Shown piece after piece: positions 2,513 to 47,196 of a DNA stretch of 64,000 nucleotides (position 1 is the first letter of the stretch; each line of letters starts with the position of its first letter). Both the position numbers and the translations under genes were made by a program. Source of the DNA: Cyanophora paradoxa CCMP329 (Eukaryota; Plantae; Glaucophyta); the NCBI GenBank assembly GCA_004431415.1, contig QPMI01000133.1, forward strand, positions 62,001 to 126,000, read 5' to 3'. The notes beneath the pieces were generated by a model that saw only the letters and a list, made by a program, of their open reading frames with translations, was not told where the DNA came from and did not search any database.

Positions 2513-2555
2513 CCTCTTTATAAACAAAGAAGATATATTAGAAGTATATAAGATA

Positions 2556-21700: not shown

Positions 21701-22335
21701 TATTGCCTCCTTCTAGGCTGCTTCTCGCCCTCGCCCTCCTTGAACTTATAATTAGGTCTTCCTCCCCTCCGGTCGTCCTCGACGTCCTCGACGTCCTCCC
21801 CGCCCTGCTGCTCCGAGGCCTCGCCCTCCTCCTCCTTGCATGATCCGATGATCATGAACTTAGGGCGCCTCCTCCGAGGCTCCTCCGGTCGACGTCTCCA
21901 TCTCCGTATGCATGGCCCAGTGGCCATGGGCCAGCGGCCTCAAAATCGAACGTTAACGAATTCAAAGCGACACAATTGCAGGCACGAATCCTTTGGCGAC
22001 GGTACATAACATCTGCGCATGCGCCTAAATCTACTGCACATATATCTATAAGCGGCTATTCGTCCTAATTATAATCTACAAGCGGCTATTCTGCACATGA
22101 AATCTGCGCCTATTTGCCATATTAAAAAGCGGCTACGTACATAAATCACAACGCCGAAAAGAGGTCGCAGCCAGCCAGCGCCCTCAGGCACTCCTCTACA
22201 TCTGCCCCGGCCCCCGTCCCGCGATCAGTCCCACACACAAGAAATTAAAAAGAGAGAGAGAGAGAGAGACCCCAGCCCCGGCCCCGCGCTTGGCGCACCA
22301 AGCACGAGCGCGAGCGCAGTCGCGGGCCCCCGCTC

Positions 22336-27866: not shown

Positions 27867-30545
27867 CTAGTGTATGCCGCCGTAGGAGCAGCGCGCTGCT
27901 CCGGCCGCCGCCGCCGCCGCCGCCGCCGCCGAGCGCGCCACCAGCTCCACCTGCGCCCCCGGGCCGTGCCGGTGGTGAGGCCGGCCGCGGGGCCCGGCCC
28001 CCGCTCTGGTGCCGGCCCGGGATCCGCCGGCGCGGCGCGGCGCGACGCGACGGGCCTAGCCTAGGCTCTAGATTCGGCGCGGCGGGCCTAGCTGAGGCTG
28101 GGCCCCGGGGGCCTGCGGTCCAGCCCCGCCCAGGGCGGCTAATCAGTGCGGCTAATCATAAGGGCTCCGGCGAAGGCCTCGGAAAAGGGCGCAGGGCCAA
28201 GTCGAGGCTGGGGCCCGGGGCCCGCGGCCCCGCGGCGGCGGGGCGGGGCGGAGCCGGGCCTTCAGCAAGGAAAGATCTCCCACGGGCCCCCGGCGGCGGG
28301 GCGGGGCGGGCCTAAAGCTAGAAATCTGGAGCCTGGTCTAGGCTTGGCCCAAGGGCGCGGGGCCAGAGCGGGCTGGGGCCCGTGCTCTAGTCCGACGGTC
28401 TAGATCTTCAGCGGCGGGGCGGGGCGGGCCCGGGGCGGGCGGGGCGGGCCCGGGGCGGGGCGGGGCGGGGCGGGGCGGGCCTGGATGGTGGTGTGGTCGA
28501 TCGCGTGCCGCGCGAGGAGGATCTCCTGCGCCTGCTCCAGCACCTCCCGCTGCCCGCGTACCCCCCTCGTCGGCGCCCGGGGGGGGGAGGATAGGGGGGA
28601 AGGAAGAAGAGGGGGGGGTACCTGGACGCGGCCCTGCTGGCCAGGCTCGGCCTCCGCCACTGCGCGACGGCCCCCGGCTCGATTCGAATCGAGAAGGGCG
28701 TACCCCTCCCCCGCCCGGGCGGGGGTACCCAGGTGCACGGAGAGGGCGCGCAGGTTGACCGCCACGCTCCACACGTGCAGGTCTGGCGGGGGTACGTGCG
28801 AGCGTGAGGGGAGAAGAAGCCCGCGCGGGGGTACAGACAAGAATCGCAAGCACCGTGGACCTCCGTCACGGACGCGATCTGCAGCAGGTCTCCCTTCACC
28901 GTGTCTGGGGGTACGGCGCAGATTGAGCGGAAGAAACAGAGTAGGCGGGGTACAGGATGAGAAGGTAGGGCGCACCGGGGGAGACGCCAGGGGGGGTAGC
29001 CTCCATCAGGACGGCGACGTTCCCCGTGAGGAGGGATACCGTCGCCGGGAGCACGAGCAGCAGAACCGCCAGCGCCGCCGCCGGGTCCACCTACAAGATT
29101 TTAGAGGGGGGAAGGAGGCAGAGGGGGGTACGGCTGCTCGCCTGGTGCCAGTGGGCGGCGAGGGGGGAGAGGAAGGGCCACGCGGGCCGGTAGTGGATCG
29201 CGAGGGCTACCAGCACCACCACCAGGCTCTGGGGGGTACGTCAAGATCTAGAGGCGGGAGGGCCTGGGCGGGGGTACGGGACGGCGGACCTGCAGGAGGC
29301 CGATGGGCCGGGGGTGCACGCAGTAGGACCCGGAGCTGGGGGGTACGTGAGCGCAGGGCAGGCGATCGCTTTGGACAGGGGTACGGGAAAGGGAGGGGGT
29401 GCGGTCGCGCCTGCCGTGGGAGTGCCGGGGCGAGGCGGCGGAGTCGAAGGGGGAGGGGCCGCCCCTCGCGTAGTGCACGTGTCCGACGCCGCCCTCCCGC
29501 CCGCTCTATCCCCGAGGCTCAGGGGTAAGCGAGATTCAGGGGTACGCGAGGCTCAGAGGGGATACGGTGCGCTCGCTCGCTCGCTCGCCTTGAAGATGCC
29601 GCCGAAGATGTGGTGCACGCTGGCGGGGTACAGGGCGTGAGGAAGGAGGGGGAGGGGGGCGGGGAAGGATTCGGCTCACCTGAAGAGGGACTGCCCGTGG
29701 AGGAGTACCCCCACGAGGGCAACGATCGCGAGGGAGGCTGAGGCGGCGATCGCCATCCATTTCGTGTCCCCCAGACCCCGCGGCTGGCGGAGGGGGGTAA
29801 GGGATTCGCCCGGGCCCGAGGGGAGGGGAGGGGGTGGGGAGCGGGCGCGCGTCGCTGATCATGAGGCGATGGACGGCGGTCCAGACGAGGACGCCCGAGT
29901 ACCCCCAGATGACGAGCACGCCCAGCAGGGCTGCGGGGGGATAAAGAGGGGTACGGGAAGGTGATCCTAGGAGGCGCGTGGGGGGTACGGCACCGAAGAT
30001 GATCTCGGCGCGGTGGAAGCCGTAGGACCAGCGGGCGGAGGGCGGCTTGGCGGAGAAGTACGAGGCCGCGAAGCTGCGTACCCCGGAACGCGTAGGTTCG
30101 AAGAAGGAGGGGGGGGGCAAGAGGGCGCGGGGGGGGGTACCTGATGGAGAGGGCGGAGAGGTCGGAGGCGAGGTGGGCGACGTCGGCGAGGAGCAGGAGC
30201 GAGCTCGAGAGGACCGTCCCCGAGATCTGAGGCGCCCGTCGGCGAAGGAAAGCGAGCAGGCGCGTGCGGGGCGCCCGGCGCGGCGCACCTCGACGGCGAC
30301 GGCTGCGGGCGAGAGGCCGGGCGCGCACGTGGGGTCAGCACCGGAGGGCTAGCCACGCGTACGGGCGGCGGGGCGCGGTCGGACCCGCGAAGAGGAGAAG
30401 CACCGACAGAAAGTTCTAGAGCACAGATCCGGAGCTCGCGATCGGGCCGCTGCGGCGCGTGCGAGCTCGAGTTCGAGCTGCCAGGCTGCAGCTGCGCATA
30501 CGCATGCGGCACGTCTGAATCTCCTGCATCCGCCGCGAACGTCAT
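27867..30545 (-). pseudogene. CDF/ZnT family cation efflux gene, copy 1 (possibly disrupted)
   Basis: LLADVAHLASD, SYGFHRAEI, VDPAAAL..LMEATP, DLHVW, HTTIQ|VE. In-frame TAG at ~30416 in the first TM exon relative to copy 2. Confidence 0.65.
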
Positions 30546-30666
30546 GGTCAGCGGTCAACCGAGCCTGGGCCGACGTCGGAGGTTAGCATATGCATAGTGG
30601 GGGGAAAATGCCGCATGCGCCCAGCGGCCAAGCAAATGTCGAACGATGATGAAATTGCTAAGGGCG

Positions 30667-31094
30667 GCTCGTCCAAGAACAGTTGCAACACGCTTTATAG
30701 ATATGCTAGCAAAAGCTATAGAATAGATAGAGATATGAATTCGCGATCGAAGCACACTACAAGGCCTAGGCTATCAATAGTAGATATACATCGGTACGTC
30801 GCATAACTTGAGTCATGTCCGATACTTCTACACTTAAAACGTACATCTATAAATATTCTCCCCGAGGCCGGGCCCGGGGGCCCGGGGGCAGCTCGTCCGG
30901 GAACAATTGCAGCACGCTTTAGACTAGCTCTAGCTATAAAATTGATAGAGATGTGAACTTTTCGGAAGCACACAATCAATAGATATCGGTATTCAGGCCC
31001 TACAAAATCAGTCTAAGTACTTGAGCAGTGGCCGATAATTCTACACTTCTAAACGTACGCGTACATCTATAAAATATTCTAGCAGCTCCGAGGC
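30667..31094. repeat. Diverged ~200-bp tandem duplication
   Basis: 30667-30868 and 30891-31094 share GCTCGTCC..GAACA.TTGCA.CACGCTTTA, GATAGAGAT, GAAGCACAC, TTCTACACTT, CGTACATCTATAAA and CCGAGGC in order. Confidence 0.8.
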
Positions 31095-31233
31095 TCGGGG
31101 CGTCCTCTCGCAGACTCTAGATCTAAGAGCCGGCGCCGCCCTCGTCTTCAGGGCCCGTCGAATCCTGGAGGCCTGGATCTGACTGGCCGTCGTCCTTTCA
31201 GGCCCGCTGGCTCTGCAGAGGGATCGGGGGGAT

Positions 31234-34200
31234 TTAAGTAGGGGTTCTCCAGCTGGGAATCTCGGGCTGTGCTTCGCCCTCTGGGGGGTTTGCCATGACG
31301 CCCGAGCCCGGCGGGCCCAGCCAGTCGAGCAGCCCCGGGAAATCCAACGCGTCCCGCTCCAGCTGCAGCGCGTCGTAGCCGCCGGCGGCCAGGCGGAAGG
31401 GCTGCGGCTCCACTGCCACGGGCTCGCTCGCCGAGGCCGTCGCCCCTTCGGCCGCGGCCACCGGCGACGTGCCGGCGACGCTGGTCACGGTGGCCGAGCA
31501 GACGAAGGCAATGTCCGGCTCGGCGAGGGCGAAGCTGGCCTCGGCGACGAGCAGCCGCGGCAGAACGTTGGGCCAGTAGCGGGCGGACCTCTGCTGCGGG
31601 GTCGTGCAGTTCACGAGCAGCGGCTCGCCTAGCGGGCTGCTCGATGCGAACAAGTACGGACGGCTCGAGAACACCTGAAACGAGATAAGCGACAAGGTTC
31701 AATAATCGTGAGCTCACGTGAGCACCAAAGTGACGTTTGAAGCTGTCAGCACTGGCTCACTCCTGCCCTTTGGCTGGCAGCTGATGCTGGCAATGGTCGG
31801 AATGTCGGAGCCGCTTATAGTGTTGAAAGCGAAGACAAAGAGGTCGTACTGCCGCGCCCCGCCCACATTTGAAACGCTCGAAGCTACCCGGACGATTGGC
31901 GCCGCCGGAACAATCGCCCGTAAGGATGCCGCTACAGCTGCCCCCGGCATTGACGAATTGAAGGCTGCAGCGCAGATGCGCTCCTGCCAGCGCTCTGTGC
32001 GGTTTACAGAGCCGTACGTGCTCTTAAGCTCTTCGTCCGTAAAAGACCGCGAAATGCGTGCGCATGCAGACTTGGTCAACGCCTCCCGCGAGAGGTCGAT
32101 GATATGCATAGCATATTCGTCGTCTCCTACCACGTAGCGTAGCGCCACGTACATGCCATCGTCGCTGACGGTCGGTTGCGCGGGCAGTTGGGTATTTCCG
32201 TCGACGTACTTTGCGTCGACTGGAATCGTTCGCGCTCTATCAGCAGCGGAGGCGCCGTCCTCGAGGTCCATTATCTGAAGCTCGGAGAGCGACTTCCACA
32301 CCGCGACAAAGCGACCTGCTTCGGAGCTCGGACGTCCAAAAAGAGCAGTCACAACAGATTCGGGCGCACCGTTTCGTGAGAAGCGGGGACTGTATTTGCC
32401 GAACGGGATAAATATATTTGCAGAGTTTAGCGGCTGATCACCCACGCCGCTGTAGTTCATCCGCCAGAGCGATTCGATACTCTCGAATCCGCGCGCTCCA
32501 GTCGAGTCCACGAGCCAGAGCGTCAAGCCATCACTGGCAAGATACGTGTTGCAGTCCGCTATCGATATGCAAATTTGGATTAGTCATGATCATGATATCG
32601 ATTCCCATATATAGCAACTGTGAGGCGGACGGCGCTCACTGTAAGAAGGTCTGCGAATTTTGATATCAGTCGATATTAATGTCGACAAGGAATTTGAATC
32701 AGTTGCAATGTTAATGACGTCATCGCACCCGGCTCTGGCATTTTTTAGCAGTCGATTCTTGCCGCTTCGCATATTCATGTTGTATTTGTAATCTGGTGTG
32801 AACAAATTAAAGCTAATCATTCTGCCGACGATGCTGTAAGACATGAGCAGATGCGCACCAAGGTCATACTCGCCGAATCTCAGGTTAAAAGCAGAAGGTG
32901 CCAAGTCGAGCTGTGGTACTCCTGCAATAAACGTCAGTACTTATATATATTAATGAAAAGCTTGCTTAGTGACGTCGGTCGTGCCTGTCAGCTGTGCCAC
33001 ATGCACGTAGTCACCAGCACTGTTGACCACAAGAATAGCTTGCTTCAAATCAACGATAAGGGTTTCGTTCCAGAATGCCATCTGCCTGCACATGCGGACA
33101 CTTTCGCCGCTCCACTGAGGCACGACCGGCGGCTGCACGCTCCACTCGCTGCCGTCGAACGTCCCGCGGATGATCACGATGCGCTCGCGGCTCTCGGAGA
33201 AGCCCGAGCGACTGCCGCCACGAAGCGACTGTCGAGCATACACGTATTGCGAGCCGCCAAATGTAATATTGATTGGTAGCGCTTTGCCTGGTTCGTGCGG
33301 AGTGGGGCAGAAGACGGTGCCCTCGGGACAGTCGGGCGCATCTCCAATCGCGTAATCAACAAAGTTGGGCACTGCTTCTACCTGCCCAACGTATCCTTCA
33401 TATTGTTTCGAAGTTTTCAGACCCAAAAAGTTGTCCCACGAGAGCCCCTCGTCCAGAATAGTCGAGGTAGCGCTGAAACAAAACGCGAAGGATCCGTCGT
33501 CGCTGAAAGCAGCAGCATGCTGGGAATCTGCTGGCGAATTTGAGTCTAGCTATAGATCTCAAGCTCATGATAAAATGCATAAAGATATTCCCAGCATCTC
33601 ACCGGTGACTGAGGCTCTTATAGGCTGCTTCAAAGTGAAGCGGACTGGAACTTGATGGCCGGCTGTGTTTTCCACCGTAGCATTGGGAAGCCGCTCGTTC
33701 TGCTCCGCCTTGTAGCGCTCCATGTCACGCTTCCAGCGCATCAGCTCGTTAGTCGGAGTAAAGAGATGCTGGAAAGGCAATCGCAGCTCCGGCCATCTCT
33801 CGAACACGGAGAAAGCATCCGAAGCGTTTGGAATTCCCTGCAGAAGAGCAAATAAACGAGCAATAGTTTAACCGATTTTACTAACTCTCACATTCGAATC
33901 CGTCTTATAGATGACGCCAGCAATCGCGGCCCATCCATTTGGCTGAAAAGCGAGCGGCCGGTATGGCTCCGACGGTGAAGGGAACATGTTTGGATCGTAT
34001 TCGGCGAGCTTCGGCAGGGTCCCTTTCTTGGTAACAAAATATTGACCTTTTGTTTCATTGTACTTAATCTCATCGCCGGATATTATATTTGCTTGTATGG
34101 ATAGATAAGGAAGATCATCGGTGTCCAGAGCGAAGGTTCGAAATGCGGAGGTCGCCGAAACCTCCACCGTGAACGTGGTTGCATCGTCAAGCGCCTGCCG

Positions 34201-37200
34201 AAAAGAAGCAGGGGCCGACCAAGGACCCTCGGCGTCCGCTTTCCAATTCCTGAGCAGGAGTAGTGTCACGCTTTGAAGCTATCCGTTTTTGATGTCGAAG
34301 CCGATGCACATCAAATGAATCAACGCGTCTCGAAATTTCGAGATCTTACCAAGCTAGTGTTGGAGTTAATGTCGAGTTCGGAGATCCGGAGCATCCAAGA
34401 GAAGAGCTGGTCGTGGCAAACACGCTGCCGCCCGTTGCATTGAGCACCATCAGCAAACCAGACGGCGCGTGCTCCGCGAAGACTAAGTATGCTTAAGTCA
34501 GAAAGTTTTTCAAGTAGAGAATGTATTCACAGAATGATCAGTGATTCGCGCACAACGAGCCTTGTCGTCAATATTCAGGGACGTAAATGCCGAATCCGTT
34601 TCTCCAGAACTGCCGAGAGAGCATAAGCTTAAGCATAAAGCGACAATGCATGAGCAGTTCATAGATTACGAGTGTCGAAATAAATGCACTTTGATGCAAA
34701 ACCATTCAGGGATGCCTGCTCCAATAGTAGTTTACGCCCCCGGACAATCTAAAATGATTTGTGGGCCAATCGCGGAGCTTCCTTTGTATACGTAAATGAT
34801 TTCAAGTTTTGAGCTTCTGCACCTGCACGGGTTGGAGACGATAGGGGCTTGCTGGCCCGTCGATGTCATAAGTCATGCCCTGCTTGCGGGTCATGATTAA
34901 ACACGCTAATGATTAGTCAATGCATAATGTACATATATGCGCAGCTAACCGTGAGCCGAGCAGGCCAAACGAAGTGACAGAGCTTGTAGGCATTTGTTCC
35001 CAGGAAGGCACCTGTATTGGGCCCCAGCATTTCGACAAAGTCTTTATCTGTTTTGAATTCTTTTTGTTCAAATAGTCCTTCCACCCATGAACCGCGTCCA
35101 GACTGAATCGATGGAAACGTGGCGGAAACCCTATCCAGAAGTGAAACGAACTGCGCAGTTCCGATCGTGAGCTGCTTAAAATTGCGCAATGTGTACATTA
35201 GCACGCCAAATATTTACCTTGGCGTTCTTTACTACAATAGGAGATCCAGAACGCCACGCCTGTACATCAATAGCAAACGATGCCGAATTTCCGGCGGCAT
35301 CAAAAATTCGGAGCGTTTTCTGATCTTCCGACAATTTAAGTTTCCTTATGTCGCTTATGAAAACTTGAAATTCCACCTACGTGGCAGTAATTATAAGCCC
35401 ACTCAAAGTTGATGCAATACTTTCATTGCACCGGAGGCTGTTGTCTCGGAAGAATGGAAAATGAGCCGGTTGGGGGCCGGACATCGTAAATGGTGACCTT
35501 CCCTTGTTGGCCTCCAACAGCGACAAACGGCGTGTCGCCAAGCACTTCAATCTTATCATGCAAGTTTTCGAATCAATGCAATACGCGTTTGAACGATTTA
35601 TGTACACCGTGACAAGAATCCGAACCGCATCTGCACGACGCCTGAGATCTTGTGGCGAGCCGGTGTATGAAACCCCGCAACCCAGCTCTCCAACGACCCT
35701 AATCAGTAATGAGGAGACTGTTTAGCAACAAGTTTCTGTGTTCGAGAAATCGATCAACTGCGGACCAGTACGCATCAAGTATGCTTTTCAATGCAGTAAG
35801 GAAGTATGGATCAAAATTGAACAGAGCCTCATCCAGCGATAAAATTGCAATTAACTCATCGAGCTCAACGCTTGATGGTACGATCACAAGCTCCTGTCGG
35901 ACGCATCTTCGTTGGCCTATCCCTTCATTCGCTCGCTCTGCAAAGCAACCCTTAAACTTAATTGGATATCAGCTGTGTGCAAGAGCGCTGGCATGCGCGG
36001 TATATACGTACCAGCAGTCTGAACTTTTCGGAGAAGCAACGCGCTTGGCAGCTTCCGTATTATCTCAATAAATGTGCCACGAAATGATGCATCAAGTCTC
36101 AAAATTTTAATCAAGACAATGTCTGAGGGCGATTGTAGTTAAATAAAGACGAATTGGAACAGCTGAAAGAGGAATGCTTAAGCGTATCGTTTCCGGACCA
36201 GGATCGCGCGATCTGGTGTTGGACAAAGCAACGGAATCCCGGAAAGCTCGATTGGATGTTTGCGTAAACGTCGAATCAAAGGTCGGCTGCGAGAGGAAGC
36301 CCCAATCTTGAAATACGTTGTGAATGTTTGCTTTGATAGACACTACGGTACTTGTGTCCGGAACATGTCCAGTTGCAGGTTGAGAGATCGATTCGAACTC
36401 GACAGATGCATTGAAGAGAACATCAACTGGCACTGAGGCGCTGACCAAATGGTACGAGAGCTTTTGGAATGCACCCTCTGTCACGCCAACCTCCGACCGC
36501 AGGACTGCAGAGATCGTGCTACAGTCTGGCTCCACATGGAGATCGCTGATGCCGTACGACTTCTTTCCCTTCAAGTCCAAGCGGAGAGGGCTTACGTATA
36601 CGCTTTCCAAAGCAAATACAGGCATCCTTGAGTCTGGGACTGGCTTGTCTAGTTGATATCCAGGGATCTCGAAATAACCTTTGCCTGGCTCATCATTCGC
36701 GAATGTCATTCTAAAGCTCGGTGCGCGCTTCGAATTCAAGCTTGATTGCGAGGGCGAATTCAAAATCGAAGTCAACGTGTCGTTCCTGAGGAAGAAGAAC
36801 AAGCCCTGCGCATGCAGCATCATATGATTAGTAGCCTGCAGCATCATGTATGATCAGTAGCCTGCAGCTGGTGCAAACCTGCCCGCCAACAAGAATGTAC
36901 ATGTATCCTCCGGACTCGCATTTGTTTGAAGCAGTTGCGAACCCAGCGGGGTAAGGGTATGATGCCTTAAATAAAAGGGCAATTTGAGTCGCAATCAGTT
37001 TCATGAAACCAATCATGAATTTAAAGCTGAAGGCCAATACTCCACAAGCACCTCAATTCCGCTTGACAGATGCAGAGGGTGTGCACGATAGGAATTGGGC
37101 CTTGATCGGAATGGTGCGTTCGACACAATCCCTGCCCATTCTGGTTCCATCTCACTCTGTCGTCGGACTCTGTAAGCACACGTGTCGTTTTCTCCGGACT

Positions 37201-40200
37201 CGGAAGGCGCCTGGCAGCGGCGATTGAGCAGCTCGCTTCCGGAAAACTCGTCTTCAGTAAGTGGAAGTAGCCTCCAGCCATGCGGCGAGAATTGGCACAA
37301 ATCGGGGCTGCAGCGGATGCAATTGCAAGAGTGAGTGTGATCCGATATCTTATTTGGTAGTTTTCGAGTTTCGAACTAACCTTGATGGAAGGAGACCTTC
37401 CAATCGTGAAGGGAATATTCTCAAAAATCAACATTTGCGCACCGCAAACATTTGAATGCTTTTACAGGAAGTTGCGCACCAGCAAAAGGCGACTCGGACC
37501 GATCCAGGAATGCCATTCGACCGCTGTGAATGCGAAGCGTAACCGTGGATGCCTTCCTTGGAACATGAGCGAAGTCCGGGTTGTTTGCCATGCAGAAGCT
37601 CGCATCAACGTTGATTGCAGCTGGCAGTGCACGCCACCACTCGTACAAGCGCGTGCTTTCCCAACCTTAAAGCTTACAATCAATATCAATCAACGGAATA
37701 GACTATAGCAAAGATAGGCTAAATGTTTAAAGAACGTGCACGAAAGATAGGCTTAATGTTTCAAAGATATCGAGATACATATACCTTTCCATACCCCCTC
37801 AAGCTTGAAGTTCTGTTCGACCTCGAGCTGCTCGAAGAACCGCGTGATGTTATCTCCAGTGTAGATGCTGTCCGGGTCGCGGTACTTGTGCCGCGTGGTG
37901 GTGTATGAGTAGTGGGGGGACGACGCCGTCAGGAAAGCAACGTAATCGTCACCTGCGCCACGCGTACGGTTTAAACCATCAGGCGTATTGACGCGTGTCG
38001 ACGTCATTGCGATTGTGCAACCAAAAAAAATCAAGCAACCATGTACAAACCGACAAACACATCGTGAATGTCCAATAAATATCCGCCATCCTCCTCTTCA
38101 CGCTTCAGACAACCCCGCTGATGCGGCTTCTGCGCATTTACGTTTTCGATTTATTGTAAGCTATAGTGCAAGATATGATAACACGTATCCTTCGAATTCT
38201 TAGCTCTAGTGCAGAATATAATTTATGTTTCTGGAAAGACCTGCGACGTGTACACGAGCGCGATGCTGGTGACGCGAGGCAAGCACCCAAACCGCACGCT
38301 TTGACAGATCTGCAAAATTAATTCGAACTTCGATAATCGATGTTGCGGCCAACGTCGACTTTGAGCAATATTAAATACTCACGGGGACCTCGAACCCCAA
38401 GCGCCTGTACATGCGTTATGAACGTTGACGCTATCACCACGCGCCTGGTGCCATCATAATCACCTGACGTGGATGATCACATCTCCAAAGTTATCGACTA
38501 GGACGCGCATCGAGCCCAGGTAATGGGCCTGCGCATGCATTAAACAGAGTAATGTTTTAATTGAAGATGAAGAAGGCAAATCGGCATATTTATATAATTA
38601 CCCAGAAACTCGTGCGGTTGGGCCCGCCAATGAGGCGATCCTCGATCACATACGCGAGCTCTCCGCCCTTGTTAACGTTGCGCACATGCGCCATCAGCTT
38701 CAACTGCGACGCATGTCATGATCAGCCCGCGCAAAGAAAACAGTGGTCCAGAGTGGCCATGGCGCCAGTACCTGGAAGGTATCGGCAGGATCGGATATGG
38801 ATGATTCGTCTGTGAACTGCCTGCGAGACCTCGAAGGCTCGACGATGCCCACGGCGGCGAGAACCGAGTACACTCCGTTCGGGGACGTAGACGTAAAGAT
38901 TTGAAAGTCGAAAAACTCGTTGGCGGCTACGAATTCGTCGACGGGTACGGCCTGCAGAATAGGTTGCTCCTGCTTCAGCTCGCGGCGGCGCTTGCGGGCG
39001 GCTGCTGTCGAAGTTGCGCCGCCAGTCGACGTGTACTGATCGGCCGCCTGCTCGTCCAGAATGGCGCGAAGCGCGTTCTCCGCGCTGCTGATCGTCGGCG
39101 AGTTCGAGCTCTGGCTGCTGCCCAGCGCCTCAAGAGCAAACAGGAGCGCGAGCTCGGGGTCTGTGGAGCTGGAGGATACTGCGGAAGAAACACTGCTCGT
39201 TCAAATTCATCCCCCTGATCAGCTCATTTCAGTAATAAAAGCTTTTCGCAACAGGCACCTTAAGCGGTCAAGAGCGATGGCAGCTGCGGCCTCCGCGGCA
39301 CGGCGCTGTTCGTCTGCAACCTGTTAGCGATCGCGATCGGATCCATCAGCTTGCAATAACAAGGCCGACCGGAAATGCATAACTGCGCACTTTTCGCTGC
39401 GCTTCTGTCTCTTTCAAAGCAGCGGAGAGGTTCAGGTTTGCTTGTTGCGCGGCAGAGCGCTGTTCTTCCGCTATCTGTTCATATTCAAGAGCCATTAACA
39501 TGCAGTCGGCAGCATATATATACAAGACGGGCTATTACAATGACGCACTTTGCGCTGCGCTTCTGTCTCATTCAGAGCAACGGAAAGGTTCAGGTTCGCC
39601 TGTTGCACATCCTACGAAGGAAACCGAATTTGAATATATTGTTGGCGACAATGCCCGTGAATCCGATTTTCGTGCCGCACCAGCAGTCTCTGATTCGCCA
39701 AGTTTGCAAATAACGTCGCGTTCTGCGAACACGACATGTCCGGATGCCGCAGTGCCAAGAAGAAACCTCACGCTTTTATATACAAACAACGCACTGCCTC
39801 GTTCTTTCTGGCGAGTTCGGCGTTCTCCATCGCAATCTTGCTCTGCATCTCCGCCTCGCGCTTCTGATTTTCGGCCTCGCGCTTCTGATTTTCAGCCTCC
39901 TTCTTCGAAGCCTCCGATATGACTTGATGTGCGAAATATAAGATTTCGATTTGAGTACAATATCACAATTGCGCAAACGATGCTGCGGCTGACAGCTTAC
40001 CGAGGAACACAACAGCGGCGATGAGAGCTCCGATGATAACTGCTGATTTTAAGACATTCACATCCACATGTTTTCGAACTCAGAGCGGACCGGCAGCGAT
40101 CACCGATCCGACGCCGGCCCTGATCTTTTTTGCCCGAATGGAAGACCGAACGCTGTGATGCACGAGCACCTGCAGTAATTTAAAACTAGTGCTGAAACAT

Positions 40201-43104
40201 TTTAACATTCTTCTAGCGATCTATGGGAAGCCATATATAAATAGTGATTAGTTCAGAGGCTTGCCAGGTGCTCGGGTGTAGGGCGTAGTTGGGAGAGCTT
40301 CTTCTCGGCGTCGTGGCTGCGCGTATACGCCGAGGAGCGCGCGCTTGAGGGCTTGAACTGCGATAGCGATATTGATGCAAGTGAATTCGAACATGCTGTG
40401 GCAATCGAATTCACACCATCTTAGAGATGAAACGAGGAAGCACGCTTGTGCTGGGCGCGAGTGCAGGATCCGTTTTCTTTATCCACTGCGCCTTGAATCA
40501 ATATTGAGCCTTCAAATGTTTCAGTTGTACTCAAATTGGCGCACATCGAGGGCCTCCTGCAAAGCAAAGCCGTGGAGAAGAAAGGCTGCGAAGGAAGGCT
40601 GCTGTCAAACAAACAATGCACGCAGTCCGAGATGTGCAGAGAACTGGACAGACCTGCCGCCTTCTTTCTGTTCTCCTTCGGTACCTGGCTCAACTTGACG
40701 CTGTCAAGCCCTGTCCATCGCACGGCCGGGCTGAACCCGAGCGCTGCATTCGAAGCCGGGAATGAGATCTAGAGCGACTCCGCATCCCCATGCGCTGTTA
40801 TACGATAATAGCCAAGCACCTTCCTTGTACTTGTCCGCACGAAGCGTGAGCTGATGGACATCCCGGCCGCGGGGTCAGAACCGTATGCGAATGTGTGTGC
40901 ATGCATAAATATGCGGCGCTCGAGCTTTGATATCGACGACAGCGTTAGCCATGCGCTCGATTGCAAAATACCTGCGTGTGGAGCCTGGCCGTCTCGGCGT
41001 CAAACTGCATTCGACTCGCTTTCAATTGCAATTGAGAGAAGTGCAGTAACATTAATCCAACAATCGCGAACCGTGATGGCCTCCTCCATCTCCTGGACGG
41101 CCTTCTCGAAGGCGGGGCTCCCCCGCGCCGCGGCGAGCTTCTCGGGGCCGGCGCCGAGGAGGCCGGGGAAGGAGACCTTCTGCCACGTGTTGACGGCCTG
41201 CGCGCGTCTTCAGAAATTTGCGGCTGTAAAGCTTGAGGCAACCAACACAAATTTCAATGCGTACCTCGAGGCACATTTTCTGACGCCTGCAAACAAATAA
41301 AGAGAAGCGGCCGGTAAGACTCAAGATGAAAAACCTCGGCCTGAGGAGGCCGAGGAGCTGACCTGAGGAAGCTGCGCTCGGCGTCGGAGGCGCCGTCGCC
41401 GAGATCCTCGGGCAGGGCGGGGATCTCCTCCAGCTCCAGCACGCTGCCCGCGGCCGCTCTCAGAGGCGCGCGCGGCCCGATCTAGGCGCCGTCGGGGCGG
41501 GGAGCCGCGCACACGACCCGCTTGCTCTGCGCCAGCGCGTACTCGAACTCTGCGCGATCGAATCAGCGGGCGCTCGAGGCTTTTTACATACTTATAAATA
41601 ATTATATCATCGTTCTTCCGCAGACCGTCGAGGCAGTATTGGGACTGGAGCCAGTCCCTCGTGAGGAGGACGAGCATGACGCCGGAGCCCTTGATCGCAG
41701 CGGCGATCGCCTTGCCCCTGAGCGTCGAGCAGCGTTATTTATTTATATGCTGAATGAGTAAGCCCGATGACAACCGGGGATCTAACACAATCTATAGGCC
41801 CCCATGACAGCGCTAGCTTTATAGCCGACAGCGCTGCGGCGCCGCGGCGCGTATACGTACCATTGGACGCCCTTCAAAATTCCGTTCTCGGTGTTAACAT
41901 CGACCTGGCGCGGTCGATCCATCTAAGGAATATTGAACAATTGAAAGTGAACAAGAGCTCGCACCCAGTGGCTGATGCCCTTCTCCTTGAGCAGCTCGCA
42001 GACGATCTGCATCTCGGCGGTCTGCTTGCGGCGGTAGCTCACCATCACGTCGTACGGCTTGATCGGCACGTTCGCGTCTGCGACCGCAGGCCGCAAGCGC
42101 CTTCTCAGCAAGAGCAGCTTATACCGGTTCCGATTGCAAGCGCACCCGGCTCGACCACGGATGTGCCTTGCGGCTGTGCACGCGATCGTGATCAGATGAG
42201 CTCGTGATCATAATTATAAGATTCCGTAAGGGCAATCATGCAGCAAATTAAAGACGCACGCGTATCTCGGATGCGAGTCGCTCGAGAGCCTTCAGGTACT
42301 CGTCCCCCTGCAGCGCTCTGACGCGGATCTCCTGTCGCTGCTGGAGCAGCCCGCCGGCCTCCAGGGCCTCCTTCACGCCGGAGGAGGCGGCGTGGTCCGC
42401 GAGGGAGGGGCCCCCCAGGCTGAGGGTCACGATCTTGCGGCCCAGCCACGCGGCGTGCCGCAGCTCCGCCAGACAGGCCCTGAAGCGCGATTTGAATGCG
42501 AAGTCAACGAGACGTATACTAGTACTGGTGGACAGAACTTAAAAATATGACAACGCACGGGGACGAGAACCATTCTGGCAACGAGGAAGAATTTTGAAGT
42601 CAATCGATATCGATTATGATCAAGACAGCGATCATCGGATCGCGCTCAAGCTCTCGAGTACGCACCCTTGGTGGCGAGGACGACGACGCACTCGCAGCCC
42701 TCGATGGCGGCGGAGAGGCGCTTGCGGTGCTGCAGGTTCGCGATGTCGCCCGCAGCGTCCGCCAGCTCCCGGTCGTACCAGCACTGCGCGCGCGCACGCG
42801 CAAATTCGAATTGATGTTCACAATTTGCTGCGCATGCGCTGCGGCGCGCGGCGCCGGCCAACGCACATACGTCCTTATGCAAACATGAAATGGATAGTAA
42901 TTGATATTGGCATGGGCGGGATTTTTTTGTTTTTGGTGAATTACTGGCCACAGTCTCTAGATCTAGATCTAGACACTGGCATGCATATTGGCGAGATGTG
43001 ACCTTGAGCCCGTATCGCTGGAGCGCCGCTGCAAGACTCGCGACGGACGAGGAGTCTGCCTTTCCACGGGAATGGCTCAAAAATCTGCGCGCAACAGTAG
43101 TCAT
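31234..43104 (-). CDS. Large multi-exon TIR-TIR / helical / TM / coiled-coil / beta-propeller protein (bacterial TIR-WD40-type architecture)
   Basis: Hand-spliced GT-AG exons give TIR1 (FLSHS..LKCWYD..AIEGCECVVVLATKEWFSSPACLAEL) and TIR2 (DVMVSYRR..ISHWVD..ILKGVQWGKAIAAAIKGSGVMLVLLTRDWLQSQYCLDEFEYA), then LLHGFALQEALDW, a TM at 40001-40120, a coiled coil, DPELALLFALEAL, propeller-like exons and IIDLSREALTKSACARISRSFTDEEL. True 5' end and the exon chain in 32.5-38.8 kb not fully resolved. Confidence 0.75.
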
Positions 43105-44610
43105 GTACTACGGTGCAGTCCTACGATCAGCGCAGGCGGAGTTTGCGATTGGAAGCGCACGCATCGAGGTACATCACTTTCTCCTCGGGCAGAGGGTCGG
43201 GCAAGGGCGCAGACGAGTAGTCCCGCGTGCGCTTGCGCGAATCCCGACCGGCCTGCCGGGGGCACCGCAGTGCCACGGTGCGCGCGTCAGCAAGTATTAA
43301 TATCACCCATCGCGCGCGTGATCATGAATGATCTTGATCATGACTAGTACTCGCGCCCGGTGATCATGATCATAATCATGGCCCATGATCATGAGTGATC
43401 CGATGATCGTAGTGTTAAAAGAATGCGCGCACTTCGAGCGGGCCCGCAACCGGGGCGGCCGCGACGGGCCTGGGGTGCTTGGTGGACCCGGCCGCGCTGG
43501 GCCCGGCATCGTCGATATTCACGACCACGGTGCCGCTCTCCCACTTCTCAGAGACCATGCCCATATGCATGGCCATCGCCCCCGCGGCCGACGGCCGAGT
43601 CGCGCGCGCCGCACGCGTGCGATCGTAACGTCCCTAGGCCTGCAGCTGAGGCTGCACTGCAGACTCTCAGTCGCTGTCACAGCCGTGAGAGTCTTCAGGG
43701 CAGCCTGCAGTAGTACCGTGAGCGCGGCCGCTGAGCAGTGCAGCGAAGCGAACTCAGCTAGTAGTACTCGTACGTATACCGTAGTACGGTACGCGTTGAC
43801 TGGGAGCTGCAGCCGCTGAGCGGCAGCCTGCTGCTGCTGTTGCTGCTGTTCTACTAGTACTCTAGATCTGCAGCTGCCGCGCACTAGTACTGCGCATGCG
43901 GCACTGCAGCAGCGGCAGTGCGCAATGCGCATGCGGCTCATGATGCGGGCGGCGGGCGCGCGCGCGCGATCGCGAATCCTTATCCTGATTCAGGCCGCGT
44001 GGCCGAAATCTCGAGCCAAGATTCCGGAGTCCCCGGAACGCTTTCGATCCAAAACGAATGTTCATGATGCAGGCTGAACGCAGCCTGCAGCCGTTTTGAA
44101 CGATCGCGATCGCGATCGCGAGCTCGAGGCAGCGCTCAGCGGCCCGGCGGCTAGCGCTAGCGCTGGTTTATGATTATTATAAGCCTCCGCTAGGCTACCG
44201 AGTACCGGCGCTGGCGCCTGCAGAGGCTGCAGTTTGCAGCTGCCATGCAGCGCTAGCTCAGCGGCTGCCCGCTGCCGTCGACGTCGGACCGTCGGACGGT
44301 CCAACGTTAACTTGGCAACCCGTCGTAGAACCCGACGTCTAATATAAACTTGAAACCTGAAAAGCTCGATTGGGCGCCGTACCGATCATCGGATCGCGAG
44401 CCCCCCCTTCTTCGAGCTCGAGCGCTAGCTCTCTCTTCCCGTTCTCGTGCCCGCCACCGCCTTGTTGCGGCTGGCCCTCCCCCCCCCCCCGGGCCCCCTC
44501 AACTTGAGCCTATACTATAATATTACAGCTATAGTATGATAGCTAGCCAGAGCAGCTGCAGCTCCGAGGCTCGAAACGCGGGGGTTCGGGGACGCCTCGC
44601 GCTCGCCGCC

Positions 44611-47196
44611 TCAGTGTATGCCGCCGTAGGAGCAGCGCGCGGCGCCGCCCGCTGCCGCCGCCGCCGCCGCCGAGCGAGCCACCAGCTCCACCTGCGCCCC
44701 CGGGCCCCGGGCCGCAGGTGAGGCCGGGGTCCGCGGTCGAGTCTGGGTCTTCGGCGGGGGTCGCGACCCGGGGCGGGACTCGGGGTCTGAGGCTAGCGCT
44801 CTAGAGTCTTCGTATATGCTTCTAGGCTGCCGACCAGAGTTTAGAGTCTAGTGGAGGAGTAGAATCTAGTTCTTTAGAGCCCCGGACCGGAGTTGAGTGC
44901 CGGTCACGGGGCCCGGCCCCCGCTCTGGTGCCTTGATAAAATTCAAGGAGGGGGCCCGCGGCGTTGATCCAGGCTATATAGCTAGATCGCCCACGCCGTG
45001 ACGAGCCCACGGCGACGGGGCGGGGGGGGGGAGCCTGGTCTAGGCTTGGGCCGGGGAGCTCTTCAGCGGCGGGGCGGGCCGGGGGCGGGCCGGGGGCGGG
45101 GCGGGGCAGGGCGGGGCGGGGCGGGGAGGGGCGGGGCGGAGCGGAGCGGGGCGGGGCGGGCCTGGATGGTGGTGTGGTCGATCGCGTGCCTCGCGAGGAG
45201 GATCTCCTGCGCCTGCTCCAGCACCTCCCGCTGCCCGCATACCCCCGCGTCGGGGCCGGGGGGGGAAAGGGGATTCGGGGGGGGGGGGTACCTGGACGCG
45301 GCCCTGCTGGCCGGGCTCGGCCTCCGCCACTGCGCGACGGCCCCCGGCTCGATTCGAATCGAGAAAGGCGTACCCCTCCCCGCCCGGGCGGGGGTACCCA
45401 GGTGCACGGAGAGGGCGCGCAGGTTGACCGCCACGCTCCACACGTGCAGGTCTGGCGGGGGTACGTGCGTGAGGGGAAAGAAGCCCGTGCAGGGGTACAG
45501 ACGATAATCGAAAGCACCGTGGACCTCCGTCACGGACGCGATCTGCAGCAGGTCGCCCTTCACCGTGTCTGGGGGTACGGAAAAGATTGAGCGGAAGAAA
45601 CAGAGCAGGAGGGGTACAGGATGAGAATCGAAGGAAGGGCGCACCGGGGGAGACGCCAGGGGGGGTAGCCTCCATGAGGACGGCGACGTTTCCCGTGAGG
45701 AGGGATACCGTCGCCGGGAGCACGAGCAGCAGAACCGCCAGCGCCGCCGCCGGGTCCACCTACAAGATTTTAGAGGGGGGAAGGAGGCAGAGGGGGGTAC
45801 GGCTGCTCGCCTGGTGCCAGTGGGAGGCGAGGGGGGAGAGGAAGGGCCACGCGGGCCGGAAGTGGATCGCAAGGGCTACTAGCACCACCACCAGGCTCTG
45901 GGGGGTACGTCAAGGGGGCGGGAGGGCCTGGGCGGGGGTACGGGACGGCGGACCTGCAGGAGGCCGATGGGCCGGGGGTGCACGCAATAGGACCCGGAGC
46001 TGGGGGGTACGTGAGCGCAGGCCGGGCGATCGCTTTGGAGAGGGGCACGGCCGCTACGGGGAAGGGAGGGGGTACGGCCGCGCCTTCCGTGGGAGTGCCG
46101 GGGCGAGGCCGCCGAGTCGAGGGGGGAGGGGCCACCCCGCGCGTAGTGCACGTGACCCACGCCGCCCTCCCGCCCGCTCTGACGCCAAGGCTCAGGGGTA
46201 CGCGAAGCTCAGCGGGGGTACGGCGCGCTCGCTCGCTCGCTCGCCTTGAAGATGCCGCCGAAGATGTGGTGCACGCTGGCGGGGTACAGGGCGTGAGGAA
46301 GGAGGGGGAGGGGGGCAGGGAAGGATTCGGCTCACCTGAAGAGGGACTGCCCGTGGAGGAGTACCCCCACGAGGGCGACGATCGCGAGGGAGGCAGAGGC
46401 GGCGATCGCCATCCATTTCGTGTCCCCCAGGTCCCGCGGCTGGCAGAGGGGGGTAAGGGATTCGCCCGGGCTCGAGGGGAGGGGAGGGGGTACGGGCGCG
46501 CGTCGCTGCTCATGAGGCGGTGGACGGCGGTCCAGACGAGGAAGCCCGAGTACCCCCAGATGACGAGCACGCCCAGCACGGCTGCGGGGGCGGGGGGATG
46601 AACCGGGGTGCGGGAAGGGGGAACGAGGCGCCTGGGGGGGTACGGCACCGAAGATGATCTCGGCGCGGTGGAAGCCGTAGGACCAGCGGGCGGAGGGCGG
46701 CTTGGCAGAGAAGTACGAGGCCGCGAAGCTGCGTACCCCGGAACGCGCTCGCTCGCCAAGCGCGCGGGCCCGAGGGAGGGGGGGGAAGAGGGCGCGGGGG
46801 GGTACCTGATGGAGAGGGCGCTGAGGTCGGAGGCGAGGTGGGCGACGTCGGCGATGAGCAGGAGCGAGCCCGAGAGGGCCGTCCCCGCGATCTGAGGCGC
46901 GCGCGCGTCGGCGCGCTTGAGCTTCGACAGGAAGGAAAGCGAGCAAGCAAGCGCGTGCGGGGCGCACCTCGACGGCGGCGGCTGCGGCGGGCGGGGTCGG
47001 GCGTGCACGCGTACGTGGGGTCATGATCAGCGAGCGCGTTCCGGGCTCGCCACGGGCGGCGGGGCGCGGTCGGACCCGCGAAGAGGAGTAGCATCGAAAG
47101 GAAGAGCACGGAGCCGCCGCGGTGCGAGTTCGAGCTGTGGCACGTTTCCTGCGAAACGCGCGCGTCACATGTCCGACGGTCAGCGGTCAAGCCCAT
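44611..47196 (-). CDS. CDF/ZnT family cation efflux transporter, copy 2
   Basis: Same motifs as copy 1; first TM exon open (GSVLFLSMLLLFA); ends HTTIQ|VEL...YGGIH-TGA. Confidence 0.8.

What the first reader, a model, noticed from the sequence alone, without database searches (positions are those of the whole stretch)
31234..43104. Bacterial-type TIR-TIR-TM-stalk-beta-propeller 'inverted Toll-like' receptor as an intron-rich eukaryotic gene
Seen: the ORF track shows only fragments, but joining minus-strand GT-AG exons keeps frame and gives, in order: two TIR_2-like domains; AITFDAETARLHTQ..AVRW..FLLHGFALQEALDWIK..RPTPEHL; basic RAKKIR; a ~24-aa TM (AGVGSVIAAAVIIGALIAAVVFLVI); EAENQKREAENQKREAEMQ coiled coil; DPELALLFALEAL..AENALRAIL; many short beta-turn motifs (SPNGVY, AFQPNG, LSEDQK, VSDDG); and IIDLSREALTKSACARISRSFTDEELKSTY. 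Known: this motif series (HTRL..RA..W, LLRG..L.EA..W, TM, A..QR..A, DP.LALLLA.EA, WD40s, WDL....L...AC....R.LT..E) is the signature of bacterial TIR-WD40 and STAND-WD40 proteins linked to conflict/immunity, and TIRs with the conserved Glu cleave NAD+. Inference: a horizontally acquired or anciently retained, intronised single-pass type II receptor with cytosolic TIRs and an external propeller sensor, the reverse orientation of animal TLRs and without LRR or NB-ARC. I do not know of this architecture being described in a eukaryote.
Basis: partly seen in the sequence, partly recalled or inferred. Interest (0 to 1): 0.92.

Follow-up and report, generated by a model that had tools for sequence, protein, structure and literature searches.

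The report
Tandem-TIR membrane receptor gene, Cyanophora-type
This is a real, apparently intact, 56-exon gene of a glaucophyte alga (Cyanophora-like genome) for a roughly 2,500-residue single-pass membrane protein with two TIR "immune signalling" domains on the cytosolic side and a very large outer part that probably ends in a beta-propeller; its inner half is clearly related to bacterial TIR-membrane-WD40 proteins, and no paper in the searched library describes it.

Summary
All 15 quoted motifs are on the minus strand, with one extra Ala in the quoted TM helix. A 56-exon, 7,485-nt stop-free reading frame (2,494 aa) can be built from 43576 to 31234. Splice signals are uniform (GTGCG donors, GCAG acceptors, introns 46-411 nt).

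The gene is colinear with two full-length Cyanophora paradoxa gene models (2,350 and 3,079 aa). It belongs to a family that sequence search found only in that alga.

Supported:
- two TIR domains, both with the catalytic-position Glu;
- one TM helix with positive charges on the TIR side;
- a 136-aa coiled coil;
- a juxtamembrane linker plus TM homologous to bacterial TIR-TM-WD40 proteins (hhalign 95%, E 3.8e-8).

Only partly supported: the propeller. No WD40 repeat is detectable by sequence. The AlphaFold models are poor (pLDDT 42-48), yet every structural match for the last ~430 ectodomain residues is a beta-propeller (Z up to 10.9). The first ~900 ectodomain residues have no assignable fold.

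No RNA evidence could be obtained. Function (ligand-triggered TIR clustering, NAD+ cleavage) is inference. The scan noted a paralogue elsewhere in this genome (s1-509555).

The parts
31234..43576 (-). Whole gene as modelled: 56 exons, 7,485-nt CDS, 2,494 aa plus stop
   Evidence: Own spliced alignment guided by paralogues P0003, P0008, P0002, P0006 and P0001. Assembly without internal stop. Colinear tblastn to P0003.
43161..43576 (-). N-terminal non-TIR exons (43576-43433 and 43231-43161); first in-frame ATG at 43576; no hydrophobic signal sequence
   Evidence: P0008 and P0003 HSPs and spliced alignment. Upstream frame check. Hydropathy.
42260..43084 (-). TIR1: exons 43084-43003, 42783-42666, micro-exon 42574-42559, and 42479-42260; Glu at model aa 149 (ACLAEL, about 42466)
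   Evidence: Pfam TIR_2 on the first fragment, E 0.0054. P0008 and P0003 each have two TIR_2 stretches. Micro-exon matches P0008 5/5. Glu motif.
41363..42173 (-). Inter-TIR exon 42173-42146 and TIR2: exons 42077-41965, 41904-41861, 41717-41626, 41549-41513, 41443-41363; Glu at model aa 310 (YCLDEF), its codon split by the intron at 41625-41550
   Evidence: The P0003 equivalent aligns to the plant RPP1 TIR with the Glu of the plant WCLDEL motif conserved in the aligned column.
40119..41286 (-). Juxtamembrane helical linker (nine exons 41286-40265 plus the 5' part of a tenth, 40169-40119): motifs FDAETARLHTQ, LTLRADKYKE, AVRW, FLLHGFALQEALDWIK, RPTPEHL and the basic RAKKIR; includes one GC-AG intron (donor at 40264)
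   Evidence: Spliced alignment. hhalign of Cyanophora linker plus TM against bacterial TIR-TM-WD40 linker plus TM: probability 95%, E 3.8e-8.
39920..40118 (-). Single transmembrane helix (24 aa, model aa 535-558), split over three exons
   Evidence: It is the only Kyte-Doolittle peak (3.29) in the whole protein. There are 5 K/R and 0 D/E in the 15 residues before it.
39259..39919 (-). Coiled-coil stalk, 136 aa with no Pro or Gly; exons 39922-39795, 39722-39681, 39611-39549, 39474-39391, 39320-39259; two of the exons are duplicates of each other
   Evidence: Composition. Internal DNA repeat 39386-39448 / 39544-39606, 89% identical.
37480..39195 (-). Stalk motif (DPELALLFALEAL...AENALRAIL) and membrane-proximal ectodomain, 8 exons; fold unknown
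   Evidence: 67% identity to P0008. Stalk-motif hhalign to bacterial proteins is weak (E 1.2e-3, probability 19%). Atlas embedding of the P0003 equivalent gives no usable neighbour.
36879..37396 (-). Tentative bridging exons 37396-37377 and 36965-36879 that close the reading frame
   Evidence: Candidate enumeration. GLLPSR matches the end of P0008 6/6. The stretch that follows resembles P0003 1091-1106. Frame closure. Alternative exons are not excluded.
34350..36805 (-). Mid ectodomain, about 10 exons (boundaries tentative); the most divergent part, GC3 only 0.50; includes a 248-codon open frame at 36853-36110
   Evidence: It is covered by the 1,339-aa local BLAST alignment of the model to P0017, E 5e-105.
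32085..34020 (-). Propeller-like region (model aa about 1763-2238), about 7 beta-meander units with long inserts; includes a 54-nt intron at 32369-32316
   Evidence: Homologous to P0003 1743-2160. AlphaFold2 of P0003:1730-2250: pLDDT 48, pTM 0.43. All top 50 VIA hits are propellers, Z up to 10.9, 98 chains at Z>=8. All 50 listed Foldseek hits are propellers, with at least 500 matches at E<=1e-3. Atlas hits are propeller families.
32014..32103 (-). C-terminal cap motif IIDLSREALTKSACARISRSFTDEELKSTY
   Evidence: Present. Conserved in all paralogues. Pattern resembles the C-terminus of bacterial P0015 and P0016. hhalign is not significant.
31234..32013 (-). Beta-rich C-terminal module (Fn3/Ig-like pattern) and tail, last intron 31752-31675, stop at 31234-31236
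   Evidence: Spliced alignment to P0002 and P0006. Predicted strands after the cap helices. Weak fn3 hit in paralogue P0004.

Best explanation
The locus is one intact nuclear gene of a Cyanophora-type glaucophyte. It encodes a ~2,500-aa single-pass membrane protein.

Shown:
- Domain order is: short N-terminal tail, TIR1, TIR2, a helical juxtamembrane linker, one TM helix, a 136-aa coiled coil, then a ~1,800-aa C-terminal region.
- The TIR-linker-TM half is homologous to bacterial TIR-TM-WD40 proteins.
- The gene belongs to a paralogue family of at least six loci in C. paradoxa, with no homologue of the outer domain found elsewhere.

Inferred:
- The N-terminus is cytosolic and the large C-terminal region faces outside or into a lumen (type II topology).
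- The last ~430 residues before the cap helices fold as a roughly seven-bladed beta-propeller with long inserts, followed by a beta-sandwich.

Proposed mechanism, by analogy with TIR proteins of plants, animals and bacteria: binding of an external ligand (microbe, virus or another cell) to the fast-diverging outer region brings the coiled-coil-linked receptors together. The paired TIR domains then assemble across the membrane. Their composite active sites, with Glu retained in both, cleave NAD+ or make a nucleotide signal, leading to a defence or death response.
For: Gene structure:
- Stop-free 56-exon model with uniform splice signals.

Single-gene architecture:
- Colinear alignment to the single-model paralogues P0003 (2,350 aa) and P0017 (3,079 aa).

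TIR domains:
- TIR_2 scores 84 bits in P0003 and 77 bits in P0008, two stretches each.
- The window model is 76% identical to P0008 over aa 7-448.
- Glu is present in both S-x-x-C-x-x-E motifs and aligns with the Glu of the WCLDEL motif of the plant RPP1 TIR.

Membrane and topology:
- Only one hydrophobic segment, with K/R on the TIR side.
- No NxS/T sequon in the 534 N-side residues against 18 in the 1,898 C-side residues.
- A CUB domain, generally an extracellular module, follows the homologous outer domain in paralogue P0002.

Bacterial relationship:
- hhalign 95%, E 3.8e-8 for linker plus TM; pairwise E 6e-14 to P0009.
- P0009 lies on an intron-free bacterial contig near an EAD8 protein.

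Propeller:
-, and the embedding lead.

Sensor-like divergence against the closest paralogous locus:
- 76% identity in the cytosolic part, 67% around the membrane-proximal part, 59% at the C-terminus.
Against:
- The closest C. paradoxa locus is annotated as separate models (g7418 and g7420). The split falls exactly at the segment I could close only tentatively (37479-36806).
- Both AlphaFold models are of low confidence (pLDDT 42 and 48).
- No WD40 or PD40 repeat is significant by sequence.
- About 900 residues of the outer region have no fold assignment.
- GC3 falls to 0.50 in the mid ectodomain, so some exons there may be wrong.
- NADase activity, topology, localisation and any immune role are untested.
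Confidence: 0.6

Rival explanations
1. There are two or more separate genes: a TIR-TIR-TM protein with a short outer stub (43.6-37.4 kb) and one or more downstream genes for secreted or other beta-rich proteins (36.8-31.2 kb).
For: The nearest C. paradoxa locus is annotated as separate models: P0008 = g7418 ends at GLLPSR, and P0001 = g7420 is the C-terminus. P0002, P0004 and P0006 exist as ectodomain-only models. The joint at 37479-36806 needs a 20-nt exon and a 411-nt intron, longer than any other.
Against: P0003 and P0017 are single models spanning everything, and the window is colinear with both. The phase can be kept across the joint using exons that match P0003 and P0008. The downstream part has no start-plus-signal-peptide candidate of its own in the model. 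P0008 also lacks exons that are plainly present (the TM and part of TIR2), so that annotation is faulty.
Confidence: 0.15
2. The gene is real, but the TIR domains act only as assembly scaffolds or adaptors rather than as NADases. The outer region may mediate adhesion or cell-cell recognition rather than pathogen sensing.
For: Only the Glu column and general TIR similarity were tested. Other catalytic determinants were not. Paralogues carry CUB domains and Fn3-like patterns, which are typical of adhesion or matrix proteins.
Against: Glu is kept in both TIRs across the paralogues examined. The closest relatives by sequence are bacterial TIR_2 proteins and plant NADase TIRs.
Confidence: 0.15
3. 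This is a decaying paralogue (pseudogene) whose open frame is partly an artefact of free choice among GT-AG sites.
For: Mid-ectodomain exons have GC3 0.50 and only 27-30% identity to paralogues. My first alignments needed frameshift steps there. Several exon boundaries are tentative.
Against: With stricter settings a path without frameshift or stop exists through all 56 exons. There is a 248-codon and a 289-codon open frame in 49-52% GC sequence. Splice signals are consistent. Catalytic and structural motifs are conserved.
Confidence: 0.08

Closest known systems
Bacterial TIR-TM-WD40 proteins, e.g. 'TIR domain-containing protein' of Symploca sp. SIO2E9 (P0012), a Chloroflexi MAG (P0015) and P0009 on Logan contig SRR17893155_3342
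   Same: N-terminal TIR_2. The same helical linker motifs (HTR..L.RA.EW / LLxG..L.EA..W / P.P..L). A basic stretch, one TM helix, a coiled coil, then a beta-rich C-terminal region ending in an AC....SR/N.(L/F)(S/T)..E cap-like motif. Tandem TIR-linker units also occur in bacteria (P0012). Linker plus TM homology is significant.
   Different: The alga's protein is encoded by 56 exons. It has a 136-aa stalk and an outer region about three times longer, with no recognisable WD40 repeats. It also has an extra beta-sandwich tail, and CUB domains in paralogues. Identity in the shared part is only about 29%.
Cyanophora paradoxa gene models tig00020848_g14611.t1 (P0003), tig00020904_g15278.t1 (P0017) and tig00001181_g7418/g7420 (P0008/P0001)
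   Same: Same family and same domain order. The window model is 42% identical to P0003 and 40% to P0017 over about 1,000 aa. It is 76% and 67% identical to P0008 and 59% to P0001.
   Different: None is identical to the window, so the window's gene is either an unannotated paralogue or comes from another strain or species. P0017 has an internal duplication of part of the outer region. The public models carry no functional name.
Animal Toll-like receptors
   Same: Single-pass membrane receptor logic, with an outer repeat-type sensor and a cytosolic TIR.
   Different: Opposite orientation (TIR N-terminal, type II). Two TIRs. No LRR. The TIRs are closer to bacterial and plant TIRs, with the catalytic-position Glu kept. 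No evidence of common descent of the whole architecture.
Plant TIR NADases (RPP1 TIR, PDB 5teb and 7crb) and bacterial Thoeris ThsB / SAVED-TIR effectors
   Same: TIR2 core aligns with the WCLDEL region of plant TIRs, and the Glu is conserved. PADLOC TIR models match.
   Different: No NB-ARC, LRR, SAVED or SIR2 partner domain. The protein is membrane-anchored.

Membership tests
TIR domain (Pfam PF13676 TIR_2 / PF01582 TIR) | Profile match above the curated threshold | tested here: met
   Single window exons stay below threshold (17.6 and 13 bits against 28) because the domains are split over 4-5 exons. Paralogues pass: P0003 84.4 bits and P0008 76.6 bits, two stretches each. The window model is 76% identical to P0008 across both TIRs. 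The joined window protein itself was not scanned.
TIR domain (NADase-type) | Glutamate in the S-x-x-C-x-x-E motif of the alpha-C region | tested here: met
   The window model has SSPACLAEL (TIR1) and SQYCLDEF (TIR2). The P0003 equivalent aligns column-for-column with the plant RPP1 WCLDEL motif. Enzyme activity itself cannot be tested here.
Bacterial TIR-TM-WD40 proteins | Homologous helical linker and single TM helix after the TIR | tested here: met
   hhalign A3 against A4, TIR excluded: probability 95%, E 3.8e-8, 114 columns.
Bacterial TIR-TM-WD40 proteins | Post-membrane stalk motif (D..LAL.LA.EA ... ERTL) | tested here: inconclusive
Bacterial TIR-TM-WD40 proteins | Canonical WD40 repeats recognisable by profile | tested here: not met
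   No WD40 hit in P0003, P0017, P0002 or the window exons; there is only a sub-threshold PD40 hit, 16.7 bits. A blade HMM from 58 bacterial blades gives 3 hits at >=2 bits against 0.8 in shuffles, and none at >=4 bits.
Beta-propeller fold | Ring of four-stranded blades in a confident model or a significant structural match over a whole domain | tested here: inconclusive
   Model of P0003:1730-2250 has pLDDT 48 and pTM 0.43, with about 7 beta-meander units. All top 50 VIA hits are propellers, Z 8.5-10.9, 200-270 aligned residues at rmsd about 5-7 A. Foldseek E reaches 1e-7 but TM is 0.2-0.38. Atlas TM is <=0.51.
Animal Toll-like receptors | LRR ectodomain, type I orientation, C-terminal TIR | tested here: not met
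   No LRR family hit in any member. The TIRs are N-terminal to the only TM helix.
Plant TNL / SARM1-type TIR proteins | NB-ARC plus LRR, or ARM plus SAM domains beside the TIR | tested here: not met
   None of these domains is found by Pfam in P0003, P0008, P0007 or P0017.
Bacterial TRADD-N adaptor proteins (Kaur et al. 2021, PMC8195603) | TRADD-N domain between an N-terminal effector and a C-terminal sensor | tested here: not met
   No Pfam hit of any kind on the linker of the bacterial or the algal proteins. The paper's listed C-terminal partners do not include this arrangement.

The most novel reading that the evidence does not exclude
A glaucophyte alga took a TIR-TM-propeller conflict protein from bacteria, possibly of the multicellular cyanobacterial or Chloroflexi type. 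It filled the gene with introns and expanded it into a family of surface receptors with fast-diverging outer domains. These signal directly through tandem NADase TIRs across the plasma membrane. This would be an independent, reversed-orientation counterpart of Toll-like receptors and the first transmembrane TIR-enzyme receptor system in a eukaryote outside animals.
Probability: 0.3. Interest if true: 0.85.

Novelty: new variant of a known kind. Interest (0 to 1): 0.62.

Why it matters
TIR domains are the one signalling or enzymatic module shared by bacterial, plant and animal immunity. How sensing is coupled to TIR assembly differs in each.

A eukaryotic family that keeps the bacterial arrangement of TIR, linker, membrane helix and outer beta-rich sensor would be a missing intermediate. 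It would be direct transmembrane coupling of an external sensor to an NADase-type TIR, with no NLR and no adaptor.

Glaucophytes are the least studied primary-plastid lineage, and I found no description of their defence systems in the searched library. The locus also gives a testable case of bacterium-to-eukaryote transfer followed by heavy intron gain and paralogue expansion.

Tried and rejected
- Pfam on ten single exon frames gave only two sub-threshold TIR hits.
- phmmer of the C-terminal exon against 1.84 billion proteins gave five hits. Four are C. paradoxa family members. The fifth, P0005, is a repetitive protein that I take to be spurious.
- AlphaFold2 of P0003:1400-2290 was too poor to use globally (pLDDT 41.8).
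- Profile against PDB sequences for the C-terminal domain found nothing.
- hhalign of the C-terminal domain against the bacterial WD40 C-terminus was not significant (probability 6.5%).
- The WD40 blade HMM found nothing above shuffles.
- The Atlas embedding for P0003:760-1400 had no usable neighbour (0.83).
- I considered the linker being the bacterial TRADD-N domain and dropped the idea.
- Five literature searches found no description of this family.
- No tandem paralogue lies in the window: outside the locus, tblastn of P0003 gives only low-complexity hits and P0017 gives none at E<=1e-3.
- The joined spliced protein was not sent to any search or folding tool. Exons were searched by reference, and the natural paralogue P0003 was used by id as proxy. 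The joined model was used only inside the sandbox, for frame checks, hydropathy, motif counts and local BLAST against proteins already fetched.

Full report
**What is in the sequence**

The region has no long ORF spanning it. The minus strand between 43.6 and 31.2 kb holds many stop-free segments whose translations look like protein. Twelve lie inside single frames. The rest appear once exons are joined.

Pfam on ten single fragments gave only sub-threshold TIR_2 hits (E 0.0054 and 0.15). That is expected when a 120-aa domain is cut into four or five exons.

**Relatives**

phmmer of the longest exon (31717-32583, the C-terminus) against 1.84 billion representative proteins returned five hits.
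- Four are predicted proteins of Cyanophora paradoxa (EukProt EP00741).
- The fifth, P0005, is a repetitive protein that I regard as spurious.

One of the four, P0003 (tig00020848_g14611.t1, 2,350 aa), has two TIR_2 stretches (E 1e-23). It aligns colinearly with the window from 43225 down to 31420.

Further searches found these members:
- P0008 and P0001, two models at one locus (tig00001181), 76% and 67% (P0008) and 59% (P0001) identical to the window.
- P0007.
- P0017, a second full-length model of 3,079 aa.

So the window comes from a Cyanophora-type glaucophyte genome. The gene belongs to a paralogue family of at least six loci in C. paradoxa. None of the public models is identical to it.

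An unchecked note of this scan (s1-509555) reports another member elsewhere in this genome with Fn3 and CUB domains. In line with that, paralogue P0002 carries a CUB domain after the homologous outer domain (E 3.7e-12).

**Gene model**

I wrote a protein-to-genome spliced aligner in the sandbox. I ran it with P0003, P0008, P0002, P0006 and P0001 as guides.

The merged model has 56 exons, a 7,485-nt CDS and 2,494 codons without an internal stop, from the ATG at 43576 to the stop at 31234-31236.

| Feature | Value |
|---|---|
| Intron length | 46-219 nt in the 52 tallied; the three bridging introns are 83, 411 and 73 nt |
| Donors GTGCG[C/T/A] | 15 of 52 |
| Acceptors GCAG | 27 of 52 |
| GC-AG introns | one |
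| Exon GC / intron GC | 57% / 46.5% |
| GC3, TIR exons | 0.885 |
| GC3, mid ectodomain | 0.50 |

- The ATG at 43104 is inside a 76-nt intron. Conserved exons lie upstream.
- TIR1 needs a 16-nt micro-exon (42574-42559, EWFSS). It is matched 5/5 by P0008 and flanked by canonical sites.
- A 54-nt intron (32369-32316) removes 18 residues that all four paralogues lack.

Two parts of the model are weaker.
- The stretch 37479-36806 could be closed only tentatively, with a 20-nt exon and an 87-nt exon. These match the end of P0008 and P0003 1091-1106.
- Exon boundaries between 36.8 and 34.3 kb are guided only by 27-30% identity.

The joined protein was never sent to a search or folding tool. Exons were searched by reference, and P0003 was used by id as proxy. 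The joined model served only for local frame checks, hydropathy, motif counts and BLAST against proteins already fetched.

**Cytosolic half**

- Both TIRs keep the Glu in the S-x-x-C-x-x-E motif: ACLAEL at model aa 149 and YCLDEF at aa 310. The second Glu codon is split by an intron.
- The equivalent segment of P0003 aligns to plant RPP1 and related TIR NADases, with the Glu of WCLDEL conserved.
- It also matches bacterial TIR models in PADLOC.
- This agrees with the scan note s1-511337.

**Bacterial link**

One database hit, P0009, is a 933-aa protein with TIR_2, a helical linker, one TM helix, a coiled coil and eight or more WD40 repeats. It sits on an intron-free 43-kb bacterial contig, with an EAD8 protein a few genes away.

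Seven relatives were collected, among them proteins named from the cyanobacterium Symploca sp. SIO2E9 and from a Chloroflexi MAG.

| Module compared, Cyanophora vs bacterial | Result |
|---|---|
| Linker plus TM, TIR excluded (A3 vs A4) | probability 95%, E 3.8e-8, 114 columns |
| C-terminal domain and cap motif (A5 vs A6) | pattern visibly similar; not significant |

No Pfam family covers the linker, and it is not the TRADD-N domain.

The claim 'bacterial-type TIR-linker-TM module' is therefore supported. Homology of the rest is suggested only by shared order.

**Membrane and topology**

- The protein has a single hydrophobic segment, aa 535-558, with a Kyte-Doolittle mean of 3.29.
- Five K/R and no acidic residues lie in the 15 positions before it.
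- There is no N-terminal signal-like segment.
- After the helix come 136 residues without Pro or Gly, 76% of them E/Q/A/K/R/N/L. Two of the coiled-coil exons are duplicates of each other.
- NxS/T sequons number 0 in the 534 N-side residues and 18 in the 1,898 C-side residues.

Together with the CUB domain of P0002, this favours an N-in, C-out (type II) orientation. It remains an inference.

**The outer region**

Sequence methods give no fold.
- There is no WD40, PD40 or LRR hit.
- There is no PDB sequence match.
- A blade HMM from the bacterial relatives finds nothing above shuffled controls.

Two AlphaFold2 runs on P0003 segments, with alignments of five or six family rows, were of low confidence.

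| Segment | pLDDT / pTM | Structural matches |
|---|---|---|
| P0003:1400-2290 | 41.8 / 0.30 | Two short stretches match propeller blades at Z<=7, which is background level |
| P0003:1730-2250 | 48 / 0.43 | About seven beta-meander units. All 50 top VIA matches are propellers (Z 8.5-10.9, 200-270 aligned residues; 98 chains at Z>=8). All 50 listed Foldseek matches are propellers, at least 500 matches at E<=1e-3 (best 1e-7) but TM-scores only 0.2-0.38. ESM-Atlas shape matches are PD40, YncE, lactonase, WD40 and TolB families, plus one bacterial TIR_2+WD40 cluster, with TM <=0.51 |

A language-model neighbour search had pointed the same way (0.92 to a bacterial WD40/PD40 cluster).

The segment corresponds to window 34020-32085. 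I read it as probably a seven-bladed propeller with long inserts, not proven.

After it come the conserved cap helices (32103-32014) and a beta-rich tail.

The ~900 residues between the stalk and the propeller-like part have no fold assignment. They are also the most divergent part among paralogues.

**How it most likely works**

The architecture and its bacterial kinship are shown. Topology and the propeller are inferred.

By analogy with TIR proteins in three kingdoms, I propose the following sequence. Ligand binding outside clusters the coiled-coil-linked receptors. The tandem TIRs assemble on the cytosolic face. They consume NAD+ or make a nucleotide signal.

The identity gradient to the nearest paralogous locus (76%, 67%, 59% from the inner to the outer end) fits a conserved signalling part and a diversifying sensor.

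**Rivals**

- Split genes. This is supported by the split annotation of the closest locus, whose break coincides with my tentative joint.
- Scaffold-only TIRs or an adhesion role.
- A decaying paralogue.

**Novelty**

Gene models of this family are public but unnamed. Five searches of the paper library found no description.

I class it as a new variant of a known kind, the bacterial TIR-TM-propeller proteins, now seen in a eukaryote with tandem TIRs, 56 exons and a greatly enlarged, non-WD40 outer region. It is not a categorically new system. Direction and age of any transfer are open.

**Surroundings**

The gene sits alone in a 14.4-kb lower-GC segment between two direct repeats of about 2.3 kb: 27879-30238 and 44620-46903. 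They are 82-98% identical and 16.66 kb apart. They appear to carry part of a cation-efflux-type gene (weak Pfam hit, E 0.0027).

Such repeats could mediate gain or loss of the receptor gene by unequal recombination.

Noticed in passing
window 27879-30238 and 44620-46903: Two direct repeats of about 2.3 kb, 82-98% identical in register and 16.66 kb apart, bracket the receptor gene at about 1 kb from each end. One ORF in the repeat gives a weak Cation_efflux (PF01545) hit, E 0.0027, so they may be duplicated copies of a CDF transporter gene. They could drive deletion or duplication of the receptor gene.
   Followed up: partly
window 30300-44600 versus flanks: The receptor locus is a lower-GC island (47-60%) in 65-79% GC surroundings. 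Within the gene, GC3 falls from 0.885 (TIR exons) to 0.50 (mid ectodomain) and rises again to 0.67 at the C-terminus. The cause is unknown. It could be wrong exons, relaxed or diversifying evolution, or a different origin of the parts.
   Followed up: partly
window 39386-39448 and 39544-39606: An 89% identical 63-nt direct repeat shows that two neighbouring coiled-coil exons (both ...ANLNLS.AL.ETEAQRK) arose by exon duplication. The stalk length varies strongly among paralogues.
   Followed up: partly
window 42559-42574, 37377-37396, 33610-33624, 40264: Unusual splicing features in the model: micro-exons of 16, 20 and 15 nt (the last two tentative) and one GC-AG intron (donor GCAAGC at 40264). 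Most introns are only 46-120 nt.
   Followed up: partly
window 22333-23073; 28402-28506; 45032-45187: A degenerate tandem array (16 overlapping copies of a 138-nt unit) lies at 22.3-23.1 kb. (GGGGC)n-like G-rich microsatellites lie inside both flanking repeats.
   Followed up: no
P0017 (C. paradoxa tig00020904_g15278.t1), residues 1346-1770 and 1892-3039: This 3,079-aa paralogue matches the window's outer region twice. Part of the ectodomain, including propeller-like segments, is therefore internally duplicated in that copy.
   Followed up: no
L001:16611-17927 (bacterial contig with P0009): An EAD8 (effector-associated domain) protein lies about 6 kb from the bacterial TIR-TM-WD40 gene. This hints that the bacterial relatives sit among conflict-system genes.
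   Followed up: no
I saw only that the stretch is of lower GC (43-50%) than the rest, and did not examine it.
   Followed up: no
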